DNA of 64,000 nucleotides, taken from positions 7,626,001 to 7,690,000 of the forward strand of contig OZ059894.1 in assembly GCA_964057225.1 (NCBI GenBank), in the 5' to 3' direction. The notes under the pieces are model-generated. The model searched no databases, was not told where the DNA came from, and worked only from the letters and a program-made list of their open reading frames with translations. Positions within the stretch are counted from its first letter, which is position 1; each line of letters begins with the position of its first letter. Below, in pieces: positions 19,841 through 40,800 of the stretch. This stretch comes from Auanema rhodensis. Lineage: Eukaryota; Animalia; Nematoda. The position numbers and the translations under genes were made by a program.

Positions 19841-22800
19841 CTGTTTAAAATTAGTTTAAAATAGTATTCACTTAAGTGTGTTACCTGAGAAATTCCTACA
19901 GCACCATTTGGAGAATGTGACATATGAGTCAGACTTAAAGTATTCGGAAGAACAATATTCAAGCCAGTTTGAAATAATCCCTGCAATTTAATTCATGAAT
20001 TGCTGTTAATTACATTATTATAATACCTGATTTGATTGGGGAACAACACTTTGGTGTGGTTGTTGTTGCTGCTGTTGCTGCTGTTGATGTTGCTGTTGCT
20101 GATGATGAATCTGAGCTTCTTGTTGCGCTTTAGCTTCAGCTTCCGCTCTAGCTTTCATAGCATGTGATTTCATATGTGCATTCAAAGACTAAAACAAACA
20201 AATAAATAATTATATTTAGAAACTAGTAATACCTTGACTTTCTCAAAGCATTTATCACATAGTCGACAATGGAAGAATCCATCAGCACTAGGTTGAGCGC
20301 CTTTTTTGGGTGGAGCTGCATTACCATGCACTTTCATAGGAGCATTCTGAGAACATATCACGTTTAGTTATAAGTAAATTGAAGATAATAGTATTTACAA
20401 TATGATAATTTCTATTGAATTGTGAGTTGTCTTTTGCTGAAGTTTGTCCATTTAAATGGTTATGATTTGACGTTGTTGGTAAAGTCGTATGATCTTGCGC
20501 AGGGGACGTTCCCATGAATGACTGGCTGCAAAAGAAACGAATAATATGAGCAATAATGATTCAAAGAAAAATAAAATGAAAATGTTTTAAAACTTACAAA
20601 CTGGGCGGTCTACTATCAATAAAATCTTGAAGTGCTTGGTATGGAGCTGCAGTGGTATCATGATGACGTGAGCCGTCATGTATATCGGGTTTCTCATCCA
20701 GTGAGCATTTTTTCATTGGAATAGCATCTTCAACCTACAATATTCGTAACAGTTAGAAAACAGAAATTTATCAATTTAGCTTGCCTGATTCAGATTCAGC
20801 TCAAGAAGTTGTCGTTTTCGTCGCAGATTTCGAAGCTTTCGATAATCATCTGGACAACATTTTTTCCACATATAATAAAATTCCACACATTCTGTATTTG
20901 ATTTGCTTCCAACCTATAAGACGATGAAAAATTAGTAAAAATTACAAAAATTTTCAATAATACCTCTTGGGATACTTGAATAAAATCTTTTTCTGTTTTG
21001 TAAATAGCATCTTGGAATGTAGCTATCTCTTCTGGACTCCAGTATGTAGAATCAGGATAAGATGATGCAAGAATTATAGGATAATGTTGCCAATCCAGGG
21101 TGTCACATCGTAATAAATCAACGGTTGCAGCTTCAATGTTACCACTGTTTTCCATTAATAGATGTAATGCTAATTCTAAGTTGCTACCGGGTGACGGCAC
21201 TGCTTGACTACACGATAGCAATTCGAAGCCTTGAACTGAAAAAATGAAAATGAGAAAAATGTTTAATTATTGAAGTTCAATCAATAGAAGTAAGTAAAAC
21301 AAACTTTGTTCGGGATCTAGTCCTTCCAATATAGATGGAGCAAACATTAGTTGATCCTTATCAGGCAATTGTTCTAGCTCGGCTTTACTAATCTCTCGTT
21401 CTCGCCATTTATACACTTTTGCTTGATAATTGGATCCTATATTGATATGTCTGAAAATGAATATTCATTTGGAAATTCAGAAAAAAATTCTCTTACGCAT
21501 TAGCATCTGTGAATCGAGGACAGTTCTCTTCCATTTCTTCTTCTAATTCATATACAACTGAAATCGTTGATTCTTTCCTCGAACATGAACCAGATGATTT
21601 TCCATAATAATCTTCTGATCGATGAGACGAGGTAGATGCTACTGACTCTTTCCGTAAAGCTTCTAATTCATCGGCAAAATTGGCGTGATTGATTTGAGTA
21701 GCCATATAGAAGAAGCCGTTCTTTCTTGTTGGATGCTGTTGCTGTGAAATCGGTGTTGACATCGTTTCATGACATGATGGCAGCACAACAGAATCCGATG
21801 GAGAAACGGTTGTTGAGCTGCTAACGTCTTCTACTTTAAGACCAGGTGAGTCACTCATTTCTACATCATCACTAGGATTGTACAGACCAGCAGAATCAGA
21901 ATCACTGCCTCCTGAGCACGCCGATGTTGATGTTGTCTGCAAAAATAATAAAATCATAAGAAAGGTAGAAGAAGAGTTTAGTGATTTTTTATTTATTTTC
22001 ATCTTTATATGAGAGGAGAAGAAAATATGTTTTATTATTCATATTACTGCATTCTTCTGCTTTTTCTCTTAAATCGTAATGTTTCTCCGATACAATTTAT
22101 TTCTAAAACTTCACGCAATCAATAACATGAAGACCTGTGTATGTGTATGTGTGTAGAGAAATTTGTCAATTTTGTCATCGAAATTACGTCATTGAAAATA
22201 TTATATTTAAACGTATGTCTTTCTTTTGTTTAAACTATACTTACATACTACGTGAATTTGGAATTTTTAATTTTTTAAATATTTTTTGAGAATAGAGTTT
22301 GATTTGGTAATTACCTGATTTTGAGCCAGGCTTTTGGCTATTTGCCAGAATAAGCCAGAGCCGTTCCTCATTGGGCTAAGTATAGGTGGAGGTGTATATT
22401 GAGTTGTTTCACCAAATCTTGGAGCTCTCAGATGGCTGAAATGATGAAATGAATAAGATAATAGTTTTAGAAAGCTGCTATTATTACTACTAATACCACA
22501 ATATAGACTTTATAAAAAGTTTTGAGATGTGTTATAATAAAAAGCTTAAAACAGAACAATTTGATTATATTTAAGCCAAAATACGTAAAATCGGATTGAA
22601 ATTAGAATGTCAAGAAAGGAGATGATGTATATCAGATTATCAAACTGAAAACAAAAGATCTTAGACAAGCTGTAGAAGCAATTGGTCTGATGAAGGAAAT
22701 ATGAAAAAATAATACTTTTTATCAGATTTATAAACATTAAAGAGAAAGAATCAAATATTTTCTAAAAATAATCATCGGTAATCGAATAAGATAGAGAGAA

Positions 22801-25800: not shown

Positions 25801-28800
25801 ATAGAGAATGATATGCAACCGTTTACAGCGCTTAGCAAAGTCAAAATGACTGCATGCTCTTCAATGACGTAACCTATATGCGTAAGGGTACACGTGAATA
25901 ATGGTGTAAACAAGAGCTAGATATGAATGCTCTTTGAGAAGGGCGATAGAGAATATCAAAAAAATAGAGATAAGAAAGGAGGAATACCTCTTGGAAGCCA
26001 TCAAAGAAGCTTTTCTCGTTGTAATGTTCGGATGGGCTCGCTGATAAGAAGACTGTGGCGACGTCGACGTCGTCGTCGAAACTGTTGCACTGCTTGCTGG
26101 ATTACTTAAACACAACGACGAGTTGTAAGTTGTCGGCCGGTCATGTATCAGAGAAGTTTTCCTCACAACGTCAACCTGAAACAGTAGAATACAGTGAGTT
26201 TGATGTTTTAATATGAATCTTTTTGACTTTTCTCAAACTATCAATGATTTTTCTGCTTTACAGCTCAGGGACTATGAAAGATGGGTTGTCTAATTTATAT
26301 TGAAATTGAAAGCTGATTGAGAGAGAAAGAGAGACTTTGTCAAAGAAACTGAAAACAGGATGTCGCTGGTAAGTTTAATAAAGAAGAAAAGTTAGATTGA
26401 GGTGGATATTTCTTTTCTTATTGATGGAAGGCTTCAACCTTCCAGATAAGTGACTACAATTTTCTTCTTTTTTAAATTGTTGTTTTGATATTAAATAACA
26501 TTATTTAAAAAATAAGTTAAGAAGTATGATAATCTTTGAATTTTTCTTTTATTTTTCTATTTTTCAAATTTAATTTCATGTTGTTTAACAACGGGTGTGT
26601 GTGTGCATCCTACATACATACATGCATACTTCAGTCTCTCCCTTCTCTATCTATCCTCCAACACTTAAAATTATATTCTGTTTATGGGTAGTAATGAAAC
26701 AATAGGAAAAACCATTAATGAAGTTAAAAGCTTATCATCAATATCTATTCCAGAGAATATTATAAAAACTGAATAATATCAAGATGAACTACATCAAAAG
26801 AGGAAACGATATGATAATGACCTTTTAACTGTTTTATGAATGAAACAAGAGTTTGAAAATTTGAAAGTTTTCTTTTTCATTTTTTTATGTTCAAAACAAC
26901 AGGTAACATATAGCTTTTATATGCTTTTTTTTGACAAAACATTGTATATAGTATATATAGATATAAACTATATATATATATATGATAAATTTCTATATTT
27001 ATTATTATTCTCATAAAAGTTTTGTAGTTTATATATGTTTATGAGCTTAAAGTTCGCATAATTAACTGCTTGATTCAAAAAGGAAAAAACTTTTTTCTAT
27101 ATTTTTCCAAATATGTTGTTTGAATACTGGTAAAAGTAATGAACTTAGAGCTTATATCTGTATGACAACCAGGAAGTAATGTATGGAACATTAGAGAAAA
27201 GCCTTTAGAAGCCGAAAGGTCATAGTATATCTGATATAAACTCGAGAAATTAATTCGCTAATTATTAATACTGATAAGGTACATATCTACTTATGGTTAC
27301 AGATTTTATGACAGAAAACAAACCAGGAGCAATGAACTAAAATGACTTTGCATAGTTTGCTCGATCAAGAATCTCTTTAACCCGGAAGAGCATTGAGGGC
27401 AGTTCAGACCGACGTGGGCTTGCAAGAACGGTTTCTCTAGATCTTATCGTTGAAAATAGCCTATGGCAGATGAAGAGCCTGCAGGCTCTTAGACACAGTG
27501 CCTCAAGGCTTTTCTTTCATCTAGTTCCAAAATAGGCTTTCTCCAACCTCTTTGCACTCCGTTCATACTAGGCAGAAAGAGCAAAACTACTGAGACACAT
27601 AGCTTCCAGTGTCGGGTTTTTCTCTGAGCGTCTCGTTTTCAGAGGAAGGCTGTTCAGTTTTGCAACGTGGATGTTTGAAACTGACGGCAAAAAAAGTAAA
27701 AAAAGAAATGAAATAGCTGAGAGAGGGAGGTATAGATAAAATATATACGTGTTAGTGCAAGAGAGCAAAAAAGAAAAACAAAGAGCGAATTGAGAAAAGG
27801 AAAAGAAGAATGAATGAGAGCACGAGAGAGGGAAAGCAGAAGTGTAGAGAAAGAGTAAGGATAAAAGAAATAGAGAAAAAGAGACAAAACGATGAAAAAA
27901 AGGGGAAAGGGGAACCAACGGTGTTCGTTGTCGATCAATAGAAACAATACACAAATAGAGAAGTGCATCAATAGTGTGGTAAGTTAACATACTATGTACT
28001 GAACTAAAAGAGAAGAAGAAAAAAGGAAGTTTTCATAAATATAATTTAAAATTAATTAATTATTATTTAAAAAAGGCAAACAATGTTAGTGCAGTTAAGG
28101 GCAAACAGCAACTTGACGTCGAGCGGCGAAGCTATACATGGTTGAACGTTGTGAACATTCTAATGATTTAGCTGTGAATCTTTAAAACTACTAGAGAATG
28201 TGAGATTAACGCTGAATACATAATGGGAAAAAAATTCATTTCAATTAATTTTGAATTTTCAAACTATATACATATGCTATACATACGTATGTGTATAATA
28301 TATAATATAGTTATTAAATTAAATTGAAATTATATAGAGAAAATCAGTATTGTACATTGAAAATAATTAAAAACACTGATTATTATGTTGATATATAAGG
28401 TTATTTAAAAGAAAAAATTAAGAAGGACATGATAAAGAAAGGTAAGAAACATTAGTTTTCGTGCATATTTGGAAAATTTTGTTGAGAATAAAGCGAACAT
28501 TTGACAAATGTCATGCGATGGAACCTGTTTGTTTCATTTTCCAAACAGATTGTCATAGATTTTAAAATTGTTTCGAAAAAATAGAAAAAGATTATGTCAT
28601 TTATACATATAATGTATCAAAATGTATGCATATATATATATACATATATATATATGTACATAAAGTATATTGTTAAAGAAATTAAAAGAATTTTGTTCAA
28701 ACAATATTTCAGAAAAGAAAAAAAAAAGAATTGAAAACTAGTGGATTGAAGCTTAAAACATGAAGACGTGAGAAGTAACAGAAGTAATAATGCTCTTCCT

Positions 28801-31800
28801 TTTACTCTTTGCCTTTTCCTTTTTTTTTGGATCAATTGAATGGACCAATGGACAAACGATAAAAAAAAGAAATTACATTGAACATATTCAAATAATGTTT
28901 CAAAGAATATTATTAACGGAAGGAGAGCAACAAAATTGAGAAAAAATCATTGAATTTCATATGGTTTTTCTCAACTTTTTCTTATTTGAAAGAAGTTTCA
29001 GCATTAATTGAAAGCTTACCTCCATCGGCGAACTGGGTGGATCCATCTTAATCATATGTCTCGTAGTCATTGGAGGTGACAACATCCTGCAAGATTTGAT
29101 AATAAAAAGACAATTTGATTAAAAAGAAAACTGTTTTATGTTATTTATATTTAAAAAAAACACGCTGAGAACATTTGAATGAAAAATATAAATTTCTTAT
29201 AATTGCAGAACAATAAACTAATTTTATATCTAAATATTTCACATTAGCTCTGTTAGAAGGCTTATATAGACGGCTATGAGAAATTAATAATTGAAAACTT
29301 TGAAACAGCTAATCAACTATCTTTGAAAAAAAGTTTCCTAGTCAGACATTGAAGGGTCATTACTTTCCCTCGGAATTAAATATGAATGAAAAGACCTATT
29401 CATCATTGATATATGTGGCTTCAAGCAACAAAACTTCATCAAATTGAATGATGTCAAGTTTTAAAAAATGATTAAAATAATTTTTGAGAAGCATGATATT
29501 AATATGTGATAGCATAACATCACATATAGCGTGATTTTTAATCAAAATTATTATTAAAATTGAAACTTGAGTAATATGATTAGTATGATTGAGTTTTAAA
29601 ACAGAGATTCGAGATCAAAGAAACAAAAAACTGCTCTCCTGACTTCACGAGTGTGTCGACTTAAAACCTTTCAATGTTATTAGGATAGGAAAGAGACAAT
29701 AATGAAATAGAGGGAAACGTATGCGAGAGAAAATTCGCGGTAAACGAGCAGACATAGGGCGAGCAAAAATGTGTTTTTGCTCTGAACTATAATCGAAGTG
29801 GTATGTTTGAACCTTAGAAAATGAAAAAAAAAGAGAAAATAGGAGCGAGCAAGACATAGAAGTAGATGAAATAGAAGAAGAAAGAGAAGAAGATTTGAAG
29901 AAAAAAGAAATCGAACCAATTAGAGCAGCGCATACATAATTATATTTAATATAATATGTTCATATAACAAGGAATAAATTCGAAACCAACTTTTCTCTCG
30001 TTAATACAAATATTCTAATCTTCAAAATTTCATTTTAAAACGTTCTCTTTGACATATAAGAGACGTTTTAAGAATAATTTATTGAATTGAGCTTCATCAA
30101 TATCAGTTTATTAGAGATGCAAAAGATAAGAAATATTTTTTAATTATCTTTTCACTATGAATATTCGGAAGATATTCTATTATTTTCTCCTAATCTATCC
30201 GAATTGTACTTCCACATACAACTTGATCAGATTTATGGTTTCTCATTGATATTTTAAGAGAAAAACAAAAAGAGCAATGAAGGTGTTTAGTTGCTAAAAA
30301 ATGTTTTTTTTTTAACTAAAAATTACTAAACAATAGAAAATTAATCATTTTATAAAGATTTTCTATCTCGTTTCAGTAAGATATCAATAGGTATCATAGA
30401 AATATTGAATTTTATCACAGAAACCAGTTCCGTTGGGATTACCTAAATAAGTGTCGAGAGTTTTAGATAAAACTAACATCGTTTAACCCATGGATACTTT
30501 AAATGCAGAAAAAAATATAACGGAAAATGATTTGTCCCTGTTTTTGGAAGAACATTGCGAAAAATGTAAAAATGATGAGCTAATGGAAGGGGACATACAA
30601 AAGTTCACATTGAAAATGAGCCAATCATTTGGGACTGGAAGATTAGCGCCGAATTTAGGTGGAGGATTGAAAGAAGACCATGAAGACGAATTATTTTTTC
30701 TTTCTTTATATATAAAAAGAGAGAAAAAGAGCTTTACTTGAGCTAAATGAGAAATGGAATGAAACGATACTGAATAAGTGAGAAATTGGTGACCATTCGA
30801 AGAACTACAAAGTCAGTTTCTACGTTCCTAAACTGTCTTTCTTTTTGGAAATTTAAAATCATGTATCTCTCTCATTCTCTCACTTTGTATTCTCTGAGAA
30901 GTGTTTCGGTCATTGTTTCTCATTCTAATGGAACTACTATACACAGACACATATTTCCGCAAAAATAAAATTCAGAAAAAAAAGAAAATCAGCTTGTACT
31001 ATGATGATGATGATGATGATGATTATGTCCTGCAGACCGAAATTTATGGATTGCAAAGACAAAAATCATCATAATGAACACAGTTGAAGAACCTGTTTTT
31101 GAAAATTAAGTTTCATTTTCTGGCTAACGGAGGATTTTTCTTTTCTTAAATACATTCTATCAGAGTTGATAAGAATAGTGTTCAAACATAGTTCCATCGC
31201 ATTTCAATTGCAACGAATCAGTCAATCGAAATATAAAGAGTTGAGAGAGAAAGGTCCTTGTCAATCTTCTCAGTCATATCAGGGCTGATAGGGCAGTTAG
31301 CGAACGATGACGATGAAGAAGACCACGATCACTACAACAACCTATCGATGATGCAGTCACATAACATCAATGTTGTTAACATGATCATTTATCTGTGTTA
31401 GCCGATAGAACCCAATTCAGAAGATAGTTTTGGTAATTTAAATTTCAAACTAGCTCATGAACATAGATATAACATCATACTATTATGAATTTATTACTAT
31501 ATTTTCTATACGAAATATAAAAACTTTCATCACAAAATTAAATTAAAAACTAAGATTTTTGCAAAAAAAAAATGTTTCGTTTAGGTATATTGTGAATAAA
31601 TAAAAATTTTCTAGTTAGCATTTATCAAATTTATAGAAAGTCGAAAATATTGACGATTGATGAAGAGAACAGCTTACAGAACATCTTCTTTATCAAAAAA
31701 AAAGCAAAAAGTTCGATTTAAACAATAAAATTGAAAAAGGGCAATCGCTTGACTTGCAGTAGGAAGAGAAAACTTTTTTCGTCACCTTGTCGGCGGTCAC

Positions 31801-34800: not shown

Positions 34801-37800
34801 AAAAAAGAGAATTAGAGAACAACTGAGTAATGGAGAAACAGAGACGTTAAGAAGCTGAGTTGAAGATTGAGCACGAAAAAGAGAGAGAAACAGAAAATGA
34901 GAAGAGACATTCAAGAGAGTGATGGAGTTGGTTGGCAGGCTTCTTGCCAGCAGTCATGTCTCCGTCTTCGGTCGATAAGAAATAACGCAGAGGTTGAGCA
35001 GAGAGGCTAAAAGCAAGAGTGCGAAAAGAATTGACACAGGATAGAAGGGCGATGAAAGAAATCTTGCGAAAGAAAAGTGTTTGATGAAACAAGAGTATAG
35101 AGAAAGCGAAGTTGAGGAGACAAGTGACGATAAGGTGAGTTTATGAGGTTAGAAAGAGCAAAAAACATGCACTTTTGCAAAATCACATCATATAGCATAG
35201 ACATGTGCAGAAATAGAGAAACTATCGTAAAGGCGGAAGATGCAAGAAGAATGATATCAAACACGGCTGAAAACATAGAGGAAGAAGGAGAGTGGGAGAG
35301 AATAAGAAAGAAGAGAAGCTAGATATGCAGAAAGAATGCTAAGAGATTAGATGTGTTGCAGAAAAAAAACCACAAAATTAACATTTCGCATCATTGATGG
35401 AAAACTATGATCACCAAGTGAATTTCGATAATCCTCTGGCTTTCCATCTGTATGAAACTAAACATTGAAAGCATTCTACATGCCATAAAAGAAAAAAATG
35501 TATCAATTTTTTTTGTAAATTAGAATGAAGAAAAAAAATTTGGAAATGAATGAATCTTGACTGAAACTTGACTTGAATTCTGTGGTTCAGGATTCAGACA
35601 TGGAGTTCATGTGAATTTCCCATAAGAAGATTCAACATTGAAAAATCAAAATGTGAGAATGTACTGCTTGTAGATTCTGATCTAAGAAAAGTGGCAAAAT
35701 GGATGGTGAAACACGAAGCAGGAAAAACTAGAGAATATGCGGTAAACTAACAAAAATGCATATGTCTCATTTCTTACTATAGCTGCCGTTTTTAAGGATT
35801 AAATATAGAAGTAAATGACAATTTGAGTGTGTCGTAATGTGTTTTTTCAAGGCTGAAAGGTTTCAATGATTAACAGAAATAGGTTGTTGGTTCATAAAAT
35901 AACAAATACAAAATGTAATTAAAGCATCAACTTCTTAAGATAAACGACAAAGTCGGACGTAAAACATATCCATCTCGAATTTATGATTTTTTTGAGCTTT
36001 TTTCTTCAATTCAAAATTGAAAAGTACAAATTATAAAGAATAAAATACATTTATATGTAAACAATTTTCTTCTCTTGAGGAAAAAAAATCAAATTTGTCT
36101 GTATCACATCATCAACATGTGATTATTAATCTCTGGTAAGAGAAGCATGCGACTTCAAATATTTCAAAGTTTGGGATCTGCTGACAGAGCACATGTACAG
36201 ACATCATAACAAAGACATTAGCTATGTCAAGTTGTTTCAGAATCTGCCTTTTTCACATCTCAAACAACCGAATAGAGAATTAGAAACATTCAAAAAATTG
36301 CATAGCAATCATGGATAACAGCGCTCATGTTTAGATTTTTTTGTTTTTTTTTTGGTTGAAAGAAACTTACGGCTCGGCTAGTGAAGTTTTCCTCCGTTCC
36401 AAAGATGGTGATGGGATTGGATGATGATTTGGATAAGCTACTGGTGGTGTTTGAGGCTCAGGCATCGACAATTTTCGATGAGAATTCTGTTGAGAAAAAA
36501 AAACAAATAAAAAAAAACCTTTTATTTTTAATGAGTAATTAAGGCTTTTACTTAGTTATTCTATTCAATTAATTAGTCTTATTGACAAATTATTTTAAAG
36601 ACGAAAACCATTTATAAATGAAGAATTGAATTGAAATGAGATGAACAAAAACAGATTGTTTCTGACTACAAAAAAAATTGGTGCTCAAGCTAATTTTAAA
36701 ATTTCAAATAAATTTTATTTTAGTTGTAGAAAGAACATACCAAATTATTTGCTGGCATCCACGGTACTGGCTCTTGAACTGTTTGAAGTGGTGGCGATTT
36801 GAATTCAGTTTTGAATTCAGTTTTGAAGTCAGTTTTGAATTCCGGCTTGAACTCTGGTTTGAATTCCGGTTTGAACTCGGGTTTAAACTCTGGTACTTCG
36901 GATATAGATGCCTGCTGCTGAAATGAAAAATTATAAAATGTATCTGCTTAAGATGACGTTGAGTTTTGATTAATTTGGACAGCTCCGTACAATTAGAAAA
37001 CAATGAAGTTACGTGAAGAAAATGTATTGAGCAGCCTCATTCAATTTCAAACGTTTGAATTTCAATCATAATTAAAATTTTAAGTTAGATTCATATACTA
37101 CATATGTACATTTGTATATTCATAAGAGAAACAAGGCATAGCTAATTGAATGTTTTTTTAAAAATTTAAGACATGAAATATTTAAAAATGTGTGAATGAA
37201 ATTTGAAAAATGAATCAAAACAAATGTTTTCAAGGTTTCTGAGAGAGAAAGAAAAAAATAGTGGAAAAGAGAAAAAGAAAAAGAGGGTTGACAATCATAA
37301 TGCACATGTGCTCTGTGTATTACTTCTGTTACATGCACAGAGACATACATATATGTATGTACATGCATACATCACACATACATACAAACATTCATTTTCG
37401 ATTTTCTCAGATAAATTAAACCATTTAGCTTATAATTTGGCAAATATGCTCTATTCGGTTTGTCTTTGTGAATAAAGTTTTATTTGAAAATATTGAACTA
37501 ATTATCGGTTGCTTTAAGTAGAATTGAAATATTCAATCACACGTTAACTATATAAGAAATAATGTTTTGAGTCCTATAGAGAGTGAAATAGATGATGACT
37601 CTATCAGATTGATAATTGTTATCTGATTCAAAACCAGACCCATGAAAATAGTGAAAAATCATTGACAAATCGAATAAAAAAAATTATAAAACCAAAAGGA
37701 TTTTGATAATTGCCATGAGAAAATTCGATTAAAATTAATCTGATATGCCAAATTTTTATTATTTTTCGTTCAAAAATGAAAAGCATTCGATCATGTTTTT

Positions 37801-40800
37801 CACATTTTAAAGCATAGACATAAGCAGTGCGGTTGTTGTCACACACAAGTTATGAATTGACAATTTGAAAAACTTTTTTTTTTTGAATTTACTCCAAAAA
37901 AAAAATTTATTTTTAAAAATTTAAAAAAGAAAGACAAATTACCTGTCGAGATCGTTGTTCATATGGATTGGAATAATTATAAAAATTTTCATGAACACTA
38001 ACTTTCCGACGATCAAACTAAAATAATAATATTATTAGTATTGTTTATATATACCTTCGTAATGTGAAAATGAAAGAGATAAATAAAAATATGGATTATA
38101 TAGGATGCAACTCACCTTATACGGAAATGACGTTCGGGAAGTATTAGAAAAAGTAGTATTATTATTGTTATTGCTTGAATTATCATTATTATTCGTTGTA
38201 GAATTATTATTATTATTATTATATTGTTGCCAGTAATGATCATTTTGGTATGCAGGTTGTTGCTGCTGCTGCTGCTGTTGTTGTTGTTGTTGTTGATTTA
38301 TTTGATTATGAAAACTATCTTGAGGATAGTAAGTCTGTGGTTGTGGCTGCCTTTGTGGTTGCGGTGGTGTTTGTTGTTGTTGAGGTGGTTGTTGCTGTTG
38401 TTGCTGATGTTGCTGTTCAAGCGGTTGCTGTGCTCGCTGCTGAGTTCGTTGAGGCTGATGATTAGAAAAAGGCTTAGCAAACATGGAGAAGTTCTAAAAC
38501 GAGTATATTAGGATACACATAATTCATCTTAAACAACAAAAAAAAAGTTAATTTACACGATAATAACTTTCTTCTTCTTCAAAACATGAAAAGCATAGTT
38601 AAAAGGTAGGTGGGATGAAACAAAACATATAAAATCTTACGGTATTCATAGGAGAATCTAGACGAGGTGGAGAAAACTGTCTCTTAGGCTCGTAAATTGG
38701 AGGTTGAACGGAATTGTTCTAAAAATAATATTATACAAATTAAATTAATATATAAATATATAAAGACAAATAAATTGAATATAAATTTTCCAGAGTAACG
38801 TGAAAACTAAGCAGACCTCATAGAAAGAGTTGCACTGCCGTTCATTCGTTGGAGCATATCCAAAGCTCTGATATCCCGAGCCCGAATTCTGAAAAAAGAA
38901 GTATTTTGTGCCAAGTAAAACCACCTCAATGCAAAAAAACAAGAACAGAAAACAAATTATCATAATATTAATTTTATTTTACCTTCTGTCCTGTATAGTA
39001 GGTTGGATAACATTGAAAAGAAATCGACCGCCGGGGTGAATCGGCGACTGTATCATAGGTACCCGCCACGATTCCTATAAAAGAAAGTATCAGTTAATTA
39101 AAATAAAGAAAGAAAAAAAGATATTAAGAGGCTTCAAATACGAAAAAAAAATTATATGGGAGAATATAGTAGAAAGGAGGTGAATATACATATATAATAC
39201 AGGTAAGACAAATCATATGAAAATGACATGAATAAAGAAATATAAAATGATAGAATTTAAATAAAAAGAAATTTTTTTTCTACTAATGGTATCGTGAAAA
39301 AAAAATAAAGCTGAAAGCTGTGATGAATGAGCTTGAGTTCAGCATACGAATGCTAGAAAAAAAGAATGAATATTCAATTTGCCAATGAAAGAAACAATTG
39401 CAAAACAAAATAAAATGAGTTGGCAAACACTGATTGCCAGAAATGGAATGAAAACATTTTAAAAATCATAGAATATTAGTGATTAGGCTTCAATCACAAT
39501 TCATATTCCTCATAACTACACCATCAAATCGTCCGCCCATTAGACCGTGTTAGACGTTTCTCCCTAGATTTCTTTGGCCCCTTCACATTCATTGTTGTCG
39601 AATATAGAGAACAGTATGGTAGTTTGTCGACAAATGGAGAAATGACCGTATATATGAATTGAATTCAAAAGAATGAAAATGAAATTTGTCATAGAAGTTA
39701 GCTGATGAGAAAAGGCTATGAGACGGTTACGTTAATTGAAAAAATGCTTGTCAAGCCGACTGGGGAACAAAGAAGAAAAGAAAATGGAATTGTCATATGC
39801 ATGATATGATGGCATGAGAATCATAATCACAAGGAGTAGAAAAGGAAAAAGCAACATTCCGTTTGAAAGCAAGTAAATAAGAAAAAAAAATCTTGAAACA
39901 AGCAAATACAATTAGACAAACACGACCAAGGTGCACACAATCTTAAGATGAACGATTTCATACTACACATACAGAAGCGACGGATCTAAGACATAACAGG
40001 ATAAAATGAATTTGCTTGTCTAACACACAATATAACAATTTAAATGAATTAGAGATTTTTTTTATTTTCAATTTAATTGAAGTAAAATTATTGCAGAGCT
40101 CACGCGTAATTGTCCCTAATTCGCACTTGCGAACTTCGTTAACAATGGGAAAAAATTTAAAAAAAAAATAGTAAATACCATTACTTAACATAAACATAAT
40201 AAATGTTTAAAAAAAAGAAGACTAATGGTTGCGTACGGGGTTTAGGCATGGCGATGAGCAAATATGTCAAGTGTTGCTTCTCACCGAGAAAACAGAGTTT
40301 GTGAATGTTAAAAGATGATTTTATCACTAATGCTTCTACTAACTGTCACTACACCTTAGTACGCTTCTAATACAATGGTGCTGTTTTTACAGGCCGACAG
40401 CAGCAACACCCGCAACAGTAACGACAAGAACGATGGTTCAGATGTTGATGACATATAAGTGACCAAAGATAGAAAATGAAATTTCAGAATCAATGAAGAT
40501 TATTAGAAAAGAAGTGGAATATATTCTAATTATAATCAATAACAGCAAAATAGAAATGTTGTTTGAATTATGAAGCTTTATGACTCTGTCCTTCTAGTCT
40601 GAGTTGAATGGAAAAAAATGGAGCCCGAAAGAATGAACAAAACTCTCTTCTGATTCTATCATCATTCAAATAAACTCTTTTTCTCTGTCAATCTCTTTGT
40701 CTACATTATTTTTTGCCTTGCTCCTTATCATATAGTGGCGTATGCGTATAGATGGAGACATTTTCAATGATAATTTTAAAAGAGAATTTGTAAGAAGAGA

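What the first reader, a model, noticed from the sequence alone, without database searches (positions are those of the whole stretch)
36798..36893. Array of seven consecutive SUMO consensus sites in an HDAC co-repressor scaffold
Seen: exon 7 reads PE-FKPE-FKPE-FKPE-FKPE-FKTD-FKTE-FKTE-FKSP. Among the five PEFK units every nucleotide difference is synonymous (CCA/CCC/CCG, GAG/GAA, TTT/TTC, AAA/AAG), which suggests selection on the peptide rather than recent slippage. Established: hydrophobic-K-x-E/D is the UBC9 SUMOylation consensus, E/D-x-K is the inverted form (all 8 lysines fit it), and SUMO is linked to HDAC-dependent repression. Inference: this is a dedicated multi-SUMO acceptor cassette, on one phase-0 exon that could be skipped cleanly. 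I do not know of it being described for SAEG-1/MIDEAS proteins. The ORF track misses this frame.
Basis: partly seen in the sequence, partly recalled or inferred. Interest (0 to 1): 0.8.

Follow-up and report, generated by a model that had tools for sequence, protein, structure and literature searches.

The report
Tandem FKxE lysine repeat in SAEG-1
A nematode's version of the SAEG-1/MIDEAS histone-deacetylase scaffold carries an expressed, species-lineage-specific exon with eight back-to-back four-residue units that each look like a SUMO attachment site. It is a reasonable but untested candidate for a multi-SUMO acceptor array.

Summary
On the minus strand, 36893-36798 encodes PEFK x5, TDFK, TEFK x2. 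This gives seven abutting F-K-x-[E/D] motifs.

The array lies in a 177-nt phase-0 exon (36917-36741). The frame is fixed by the upstream exon, which has a single open frame.

The gene is the SAEG-1/MIDEAS orthologue (ELM2, SANT, C2H2) of a clade-V nematode.

The SUMO reading is plausible but unproven.
- For: FKPE (Nkx2-5 K51) and FKTE (p53 K386) are validated acceptor motifs. Across all eight units, F, K and the acidic residue never change and only the free x position does (at least 6 synonymous against 2 amino-acid changes). C. elegans SAEG-1 and human MIDEAS both appear in SUMO proteomics lists. A separate psi-K-[ML]-[ED] site in the next exon is conserved across clade V.
- Against: none of about 55 nematode orthologues has the array. 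Similar xEFK repeats are common low-complexity sequence elsewhere. No conjugation data exist.

Verdict: a new lineage-specific variant of a known kind. Odds for SUMO function are about 0.4, and interest is moderate.

The parts
36798..36893 (-). Array of eight 12-nt units, [P/T]-[E/D]-F-K. Lysine codons are at 36884-82, 36872-70, 36860-58, 36848-46, 36836-34, 36824-22, 36812-10 and 36800-798. The first seven lysines lie in F-K-x-[E/D].
36741..36917 (-). Exon carrying the array (177 nt, 59 codons, phase 0 at both ends): QQASISEV, then the array, then SPPLQTVQEPVPWMPANNL. The acceptor lies in a cag|CAG|CAG run.
   Evidence: Spliced contigs give joints 36917/37943 and 36486/36741.
37943..38017 (-). 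Upstream 75-nt exon FDRRKVSVHENFYNYSNPYEQRSRQ, which holds an RKxS motif.
38116..38493 (-). Q/N-rich exon (378 nt). It is open in one frame only, which fixes the reading frame of the exons downstream.
36371..36486 (-). Downstream exon NSHRKLSMPEPQTPPVAYPNHHPIPSPSLERRKTSLAEP, with two RKxS motifs.
   Evidence: The junction to 29086 comes from the contig's loose end.
29020..29086 (-). Next exon MLSPPMTTRHM-IKMD-PPSSPME. It holds a single psi-K-x-D site (29052-29041) that is positionally conserved in clade-V orthologues.
25988..26175 (-). Exon VDVVRKTS...TRKASLMASK, which carries the conserved RKAS motif of SAEG-1 orthologues. Boundaries are inferred from splice signals and orthologue motifs.
21305..21450 (-). 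ELM2-domain exon (HINIGSNYQAKVYKW...).
   Evidence: Pfam PF01448, E 3.8e-4. tblastn of orthologues is.
20964..21235 (-). Exon holding the C-terminal part of ELM2 and the start of SANT. It is 70-73% identical to strongylid and Heterorhabditis SAEG-1 orthologues.
20227..20328 (-). C2H2 zinc-finger exon (FHCRLCDKCFEKVK...).
   Evidence: 79-96% identity to orthologues

Best explanation
The array is a lineage-specific, in-frame tandem amplification of a 12-nt unit inside the disordered N-terminal region of the SAEG-1/MIDEAS scaffold of the MiDAC-type histone deacetylase complex. It is transcribed and spliced into the mRNA.

The amplified unit encodes a minimal SUMO acceptor tetrapeptide, F-K-[P/T]-[E/D]. 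The exon therefore offers seven abutting canonical sites, and four of them also fit the inverted E-x-K-P form.

The most likely function is to serve as a multi-lysine acceptor for UBC-9/SMO-1. It would add to one or more ancestral psi-K-x-E sites in the same disordered region. Several SUMOs attached there would form a multivalent platform that changes which SIM-containing partners or turnover factors the scaffold engages. This may involve cross-talk with the RKxS (PKG-type) motifs that lie about 30 residues away on each side.

Shown here: the sequence, expression, splicing, frame, motif fit, peptide-level constraint, and gene identity.
Inferred: that the lysines are conjugated, that several are used at once, and any effect on the HDAC complex.
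For: - Exon and frame are confirmed by spliced contigs and by frame tracking.
- Both tetrapeptides are validated acceptor motifs in other proteins. FKPE is Nkx2-5 K51 (PMC3171482). FKTE is p53 K386 (bioRxiv 10.64898/2026.09.10.750468). A bare VKPE tag is enough to act as an acceptor, and VRPE is not (PMC2808386).
- In the human SUMO site compendium, FKxE, ExKP and PKxE are enriched motifs, and Pro is enriched at +1 (PMC13213312).
- Across the eight units F, K and the acidic residue are invariant. The only non-conservative change (P to T) falls on the free x position. At least 6 of at least 8 substitutions are synonymous, p about 4e-4 to 8e-3.
- The family is a SUMO target at data-set level. 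C. elegans SAEG-1 (F53H10.2a) is in the HIS10::SMO-1 conjugate list, with 3 spectral counts against none in controls. Human MIDEAS K590 (VKLE) and K206 are 'Gold' sites.
- The same disordered region has a psi-K-[ML]-[ED] site conserved in 11 of 12 clade-V sequences, including this gene's next exon. The elegans group has three such sites.
Against: - No direct evidence of conjugation exists.
- The array is absent from about 55 nematode orthologues, including those with a full N-terminus (Caenorhabditis, Heterorhabditis, Pristionchus, Steinernema, Ascaris, filariae). A short-protein search found no SAEG-1 relative of the exon.
- Phe is a weaker psi residue than Ile, Val or Leu. The p53 FKTE site is only weakly modified without an E3.
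- xEFK-type 12-nt repeats are frequent in metagenome contigs, mostly as short ORFs or simple DNA repeats. The motif fit of a repeat therefore counts as one event, not seven independent ones.
- Lysines 4 residues apart cannot all carry SUMO comfortably. This last point is an inference.
- C. elegans SAEG-1 was not found in the stored part of the Drabikowski 2018 target list. That file was cut when stored.
Confidence: 0.4

Rival explanations
1. The array is a low-complexity repeat with no specific modification role. A 12-nt or 24-nt slippage or unequal-crossover expansion in a fast-evolving disordered linker would be tolerated, or mildly selected, as a charge-balanced proline-containing spacer resembling PEVK-type sequence. 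On this view the SUMO-motif fit is a by-product of the unit's composition.
For: - The array is absent from all orthologues examined.
- The surrounding region is otherwise unalignable, and the neighbouring exon holds poly-Q/N runs.
- TRF scores the 24-nt period best, which suggests block duplication. Two pairs of units are identical in DNA.
Against: - Substitutions are strongly biased towards synonymous ones, and three of the four positions are strictly invariant. A pure spacer should tolerate conservative replacements such as F to L or Y, or K to R.
- The units are diverged at silent sites, so the array is not a very recent slippage product.
Confidence: 0.3
2. The lysines serve another lysine-directed process rather than SUMO. 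Candidates are ubiquitylation (turnover of the scaffold), or acetylation and deacetylation, for example as a built-in pseudo-substrate or decoy for the complex's own HDAC.
For: - Human MIDEAS K590 and K206 are flagged as 'SUMO-Ub overlap' sites, so lysines in this family's disordered regions are used by more than one modifier.
- The protein sits next to a deacetylase active site, by orthology (PMC3088716).
Against: - Neither ubiquitin nor acetylation needs the psi-K-x-E context.
- Neither explains why Phe and the acidic residue are both invariant.
- No data exist for this protein.
Confidence: 0.12
3. The units are a repeated short linear motif bound non-covalently by a partner protein, giving multivalent docking, with Phe and the charged pair as the contact residues.
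For: - Invariant F, K and E/D with a variable fourth position would also fit a binding motif.
- An unrelated nuclear protein from another organism ends in a very similar EFKTEFKPEFKPEFKTEFKSP stretch. It is the tail of a U2AF small-subunit-like protein.
Against: - I could name no known domain that recognises x-E-F-K.
- There is no partner candidate.
- The array is not conserved in orthologues that keep all known partners.
Confidence: 0.1

Closest known systems
Canonical SUMO consensus sites psi-K-x-E in disordered regions (Nkx2-5 K51 FKPE; p53 K386 FKTE; Pc2/CBX4 VKPE)
   Same: The tetrapeptides are identical (FKPE, FKTE). The protein is a nuclear transcription or chromatin regulator. The region is proline-rich and probably disordered. 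The array also fits the ExKP inverted pattern, which is enriched in human SUMO sites.
   Different: Known sites are single or scattered. Here seven sites abut with no spacer, they were produced by tandem duplication, and none has been tested.
C. elegans SAEG-1 / human MIDEAS, TRERF1, ZNF541 (ELM2-SANT-C2H2 scaffolds of the MiDAC HDAC complex)
   Same: The domain order is the same and the sequence is orthologous, 70-73% identical in the ELM2/SANT exon. The conserved N-terminal motifs are shared (RKxS, MLSP-psi-K-M-[DE], RKASLMA, PYTPPPILSPMRNGSGLFW). The family appears in SUMO proteomics lists.
   Different: None of the roughly 55 orthologues retrieved has an FKx[ED] array. They have 0 to 4 scattered psi-K-x-[ED] sites.
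Multi-site SUMOylated transcription regulators read by multi-SIM proteins (e.g. multi-SUMOylated ETV4 bound by RNF4, PMC5445624)
   Same: Several acceptor lysines on one disordered segment could build a multivalent SUMO surface without chains.
   Different: This is an analogy only. No SIM reader or STUbL link is shown here, and the site spacing is far tighter.
Low-complexity charged proline repeats such as titin PEVK segments (from general knowledge)
   Same: The composition is similar (P, E, hydrophobic residue, K), the repeat period is short, and the region is probably extended and disordered.
   Different: The array is far shorter (32 residues), lies in a nuclear scaffold rather than a spring protein, and keeps strict four-residue register with an invariant Phe.

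Membership tests
SAEG-1/MIDEAS family (ELM2-SANT-C2H2 HDAC scaffold) | ELM2 domain | tested here: met
   Pfam PF01448 gives E 3.8e-4 and 21.7 bits, exactly at the cut-off, on the exon alone. The exon aligns to the ELM2 region of orthologues.
SAEG-1/MIDEAS family (ELM2-SANT-C2H2 HDAC scaffold) | SANT/Myb-like domain directly after ELM2 | tested here: met
   Pfam did not score the split exon. The exon is 70-73% identical to orthologues that carry PF00249.
SAEG-1/MIDEAS family (ELM2-SANT-C2H2 HDAC scaffold) | C-terminal C2H2 zinc finger | tested here: met
   tblastn gives 79-96% identity to the orthologues' finger at 20328-20227 and 100% at 20188-20156. The sequence was read.
SAEG-1/MIDEAS family (ELM2-SANT-C2H2 HDAC scaffold) | Orthology to C. 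elegans SAEG-1 rather than other ELM2-SANT proteins | tested here: met
   The best hits of the representative search are all nematode SAEG-1-type proteins, including 'Suppressor of activated egl-4 protein 1'. The N-terminal motifs are shared.
SAEG-1/MIDEAS family (ELM2-SANT-C2H2 HDAC scaffold) | Binds HDAC1/2 and DNTTIP1/SAEG-2 | not testable with these tools
   Known for C. elegans and human proteins (PMC3088716) and inferred here by orthology.
Canonical SUMO acceptor site | Sequence psi-K-x-[E/D] | tested here: met
   7 of 8 lysines are F-K-[P/T]-[E/D]. FKxE is an enriched motif in human SUMO sites.
Canonical SUMO acceptor site | Lysine lies in an exposed or disordered segment of a nuclear protein | tested here: inconclusive
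   The segment is proline-rich and flanked by Q/N-rich sequence. The fold of the exon was uncertain (pLDDT under 50). Nuclear location is inferred from C. elegans SAEG-1.
Canonical SUMO acceptor site | Recognised by UBC9 and conjugated to SUMO | tested here: inconclusive
   The complex prediction gave no verdict. No biochemical data exist. The genome's UBC9 gene is present and intact.
Canonical SUMO acceptor site | Conservation of the site in orthologues | tested here: not met
   The array is absent from all orthologues retrieved. A different single site in the next exon is conserved.
Inverted SUMO consensus [E/D]-x-K-psi | Acidic residue at -2 and a hydrophobic residue or Pro at +1 | tested here: inconclusive
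   All 8 lysines have E/D at -2. Only the first 4 have Pro at +1, and the other 4 have Thr or Ser. The definition and the ExKP enrichment are from PMC13213312.

The most novel reading that the evidence does not exclude
The exon is a genuinely dedicated 'poly-acceptor' module. It would be the densest possible array of a minimal SUMO acceptor tetrapeptide, created by tandem amplification inside an HDAC-complex scaffold and kept by selection. Graded or switch-like multi-SUMOylation, gated by the flanking PKG-type RKxS sites, would then control the MiDAC-like complex in this lineage. On this reading the array is a natural analogue of engineered multi-SUMO tags.
Probability: 0.25. Interest if true: 0.6.

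Novelty: new variant of a known kind. Interest (0 to 1): 0.38.

Why it matters
If the array is SUMOylated, it would show how a regulatory modification site can be multiplied by simple repeat expansion in a chromatin co-repressor. It would also supply a natural minimal multi-SUMO acceptor for biochemistry.

The lead that is more testable right now is a by-product of this work. SAEG-1 orthologues across clade-V nematodes keep a psi-K-[ML]-[ED] site, IKME around K243 in C. elegans, with two more sites in the elegans group. C. elegans SAEG-1 already appears in a SUMO-conjugate list. SUMO control of the MiDAC scaffold can therefore be tested directly in C. elegans.

If the array is only a tolerated repeat, the finding is ordinary.

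Tried and rejected
- **Complex prediction.** I submitted this genome's UBC9 as three exon-encoded chains together with the exon-7 peptide. The score was 0.00 and the tool gave no verdict. This is not evidence for or against binding. A full-length UBC9 chain could not be supplied, because the gene is split into short exons and joined sequences have no reference.
- **Short-protein search with exon 7**. It returned only one weak hit at E 0.25, which is an unrelated gene. The tool's length limits mean that longer relatives were invisible to this search.
- **BLASTP of exons 5-8 against 111 orthologue representatives**. Only low-complexity Q/N matches came back, and nothing for exon 7.
- **Metagenome pattern scan**. 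It gave many unrelated FKx[ED] repeats and no SAEG-1 relative. It is useful only as a base rate.
- **Pfam on exon 7 and on the Q/N-rich exon**. Nothing meaningful was found.
- **Earlier findings of this scan, searched by words**. Nothing was found.
- **Stored part of the C. elegans SUMO target list of Drabikowski 2018**. SAEG-1 was not found, but the file was cut when stored.
- **Readings considered and dropped for lack of any motif fit.** These were a SIM, an NLS, a KFERQ-type motif, SH3/WW/EVH1 ligands, and CK2 or PLK sites.
- **Joined spliced protein.** It was never built or searched. All searches used single exons by reference, or database proteins.

Full report
**1. What is there**

The feature lies on the minus strand. 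Bases 36893-36798 are eight head-to-tail 12-nt units that translate to PEFK x5, TDFK and TEFK x2, followed by SPPLQ. TRF reports period 12, about 8 copies and 83% matches. A 24-nt period scores slightly better, which hints at duplication of double units.

Seven of the eight lysines sit in F-K-x-[E/D]. The last one is FKSP. All eight have E or D two residues upstream.

The pattern FKx[DE]FKx[DE]FK occurs nowhere else in the 181-Mb genome, and the reversed control gives no match. The array is therefore not part of a dispersed repeat family.

**2. Is it expressed, and in this frame?**

Four public runs from one study hold 28% of the words of window 36300-38500, which is about the exonic share. 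The run type is only guessed by the tool, but the contigs are spliced.

When laid on the window, a contig of about 3.5 kb in each run covers 38191-38116, 38017-37943, 36917-36741 and 36486-36370. It shows no mismatches or gaps. The joints are 38017/38116, 36917/37943 and 36486/36741, all GT..AG on the minus strand.

The frame follows from the upstream exons. Exon 38493-38116 is 378 nt and is open in only one frame. The next exons are 75 and 177 nt, so the array exon starts in phase 0 in the PEFK frame. The following exon (NSHRKLS...) also reads on in frame.

The exon is also open in a second frame, but that frame is not the one reached from upstream. The ORF list misses the true frame because it has no start codon.

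Contigs cannot reveal rare isoforms, so skipping of the exon is neither shown nor excluded. Skipping would keep the frame. The acceptor lies in a cag|CAG|CAG run, so it is a possible NAGNAG site.

**3. The gene**

Downstream exons encode an ELM2 domain (Pfam E 3.8e-4), a SANT region and a C2H2 finger.

A search with the 90-residue ELM2/SANT exon against 1.8 billion representatives returned nematode proteins at 60-73% identity. A wider search seeded with one of them returned about 55 named nematode orthologues, including C. elegans 'Suppressor of activated egl-4 protein 1'. tblastn of these onto the window recovers the conserved exons. The closest are strongylids and Heterorhabditis at about 72%, so the species is a clade-V nematode with no close relative in the collections.

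SAEG-1 is the worm scaffold of the SAEG-2/DNTTIP1-HDAC complex downstream of the PKG EGL-4 (PMC3088716).

The spliced protein was not joined or searched as a whole. Every search used single exons by reference, or database proteins.

**4. Conservation**

None of the orthologues has an FKx[ED] array. They hold 0 to 4 scattered psi-K-x-[ED] motifs. Exon 7 finds nothing significant in them.

A search of the 5.8-billion-protein set for short proteins resembling the exon gave one weak, unrelated hit.

By motif order, the array lies between the RRKVS...NFY motif (C. elegans PRKCSLAPNFF) and the HRKLS motif (C. elegans MRKHSAG). That interval has no lysine repeat in Caenorhabditis, Heterorhabditis or Pristionchus. 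The array is therefore a lineage-specific insertion or expansion.

Many strongylid gene models lack the N-terminus. No congener is available. The age and spread of the array within the lineage therefore could not be measured.

**5. Selection**

Their differences are therefore synonymous by construction.

A fair count uses all eight units. Column parsimony requires at least 8 substitutions:
- 7 are at third codon positions and 6 are synonymous.
- 2 change the peptide: P to T and E to D.

If 17-28% of random substitutions are synonymous, at least 6 of 8 has p of about 4e-4 to 8e-3 (binomial worked from its fractions).

F, K and the acidic residue are invariant in 8 of 8 units. The one non-conservative change falls on the position that corresponds to the free x of psi-K-x-E. 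This supports peptide-level constraint and fits a SUMO motif. The numbers are small, however, and the pattern is not specific to SUMO.

**6. Does the motif mean SUMO?**

Arguments for:
- Both tetrapeptides are validated acceptors elsewhere. FKPE is Nkx2-5 K51 (PMC3171482). FKTE is p53 K386, which is only weakly modified without an E3.
- A bare VKPE tag suffices as an acceptor, and VRPE does not (PMC2808386).
- A 2026 compendium of human SUMO sites lists FKxE, ExKP and PKxE among enriched motifs, with Pro enriched at +1 (PMC13213312).
- The family is a SUMO target at data-set level. Human MIDEAS K590 (VKLE) and K206 are 'Gold' sites. C. elegans SAEG-1 (F53H10.2a) is in the list of HIS10::SMO-1 conjugate candidates and among the PIE-1-dependent targets of Kim et al. 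2021. It has 3 spectral counts under a deliberately low cut-off.
- The exon after the next one begins at 29086. It reads MLSPPMTTRHM-IKMD-PPSSPME. The psi-K-[ML]-[ED] site there aligns with the same motif in 10 of 11 clade-V orthologues, and the elegans group adds IKL[DE] and VKSE nearby.

SUMO-type sites are thus an old feature of this disordered region, and this lineage has added an array.

Arguments against:
- The seven sites are one evolutionary event, not seven.
- xEFK-type 12-nt repeats are common in metagenome contigs, mostly as short ORFs or simple repeats.
- Phe is a weak psi residue.
- Neighbouring lysines 4 residues apart would crowd each other. This is an inference.
- Nothing shows conjugation.
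- A complex prediction with this genome's UBC9, given as three exon chains, gave no verdict.

**7. Verdict**

The array is a credible candidate multi-SUMO acceptor, and I put that at about 0.4. The main rival, at about 0.3, is a tolerated or weakly selected low-complexity spacer. Other lysine modifications (0.12) and a docking motif (0.1) follow.

The array is not conserved. It is a new lineage-specific variant of a known kind of site, in a protein family that already has data-set-level SUMO evidence. Interest is moderate. The conserved single site shared with C. elegans is the more tractable lead.

Noticed in passing
window 29041-29052 (-), in exon 29086-29020: A single psi-K-x-D site (IKMD) lies in the context MLSP...IKMD...PMEVD. 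It aligns with [IVM]K[ML][ED] in Caenorhabditis, Heterorhabditis, Ancylostoma, Teladorsagia and Pristionchus SAEG-1. C. auriculariae has NKME instead. C. elegans has IKLD, VKSE and IKME within 37 residues. This is a conserved candidate SUMO site that can be tested in C. elegans.
   Followed up: partly
window 36911-36920 (-): The acceptor of the array exon lies in tttcag|CAG|CAG. These are tandem NAGNAG-type acceptors that could add or drop a Gln. The contigs use the first one, but the joint is ambiguous by 3 nt because the upstream exon also ends in CAG.
   Followed up: no
L128:5001-5231 (Logan contig of SRR27489474); also L129: An unrelated gene from another AT-rich eukaryote ends in ...GGERAEFKTEFKPEFKPEFKTEFKSPERAEY, with silent-site variation between the units. 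Its upstream part reads like the second zinc finger of a U2AF small subunit (CNRGGFCNFMHLK). It is an independent [P/T]EFK array in a nuclear protein tail.
   Followed up: partly
window 37943-38017, 36371-36486, 25988-26175 (-): RKxS/T motifs (RRKVS, HRKLS, RRKTS, VRKTS, TRKAS) flank the array within about 30 residues on each side. This matches the scan's separate note on PKG-type motifs in this gene.
   Followed up: partly
window 38192-38304 (-), inside exon 38493-38116: Long poly-Q and poly-N runs lie in the exon upstream. The transcript contigs break there, so the N-terminal disordered region as a whole is rich in expandable low-complexity sequence.
   Followed up: no
window 20783-20785 (-): The exon ending ...LNLNQ appears to use a GC donor (CAG|gcaagc) rather than GT. 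This is inferred from orthologue alignment only and was not checked with reads.
   Followed up: no
window about 21840-21860 (-), in exon 21936-21497: There is a further psi-K-x-E site (SPGLKVEDV) about 110 residues upstream of ELM2. Strongylid orthologues read SPGLRIVDE at the same place, so the lysine is not conserved.
   Followed up: no
G000:C4:17446414-17447040 (L136:1220-1846): An intact four-exon UBC9 gene is present. Its third exon is most similar to solved UBC9 structures, with E down to 3e-26.
   Followed up: yes
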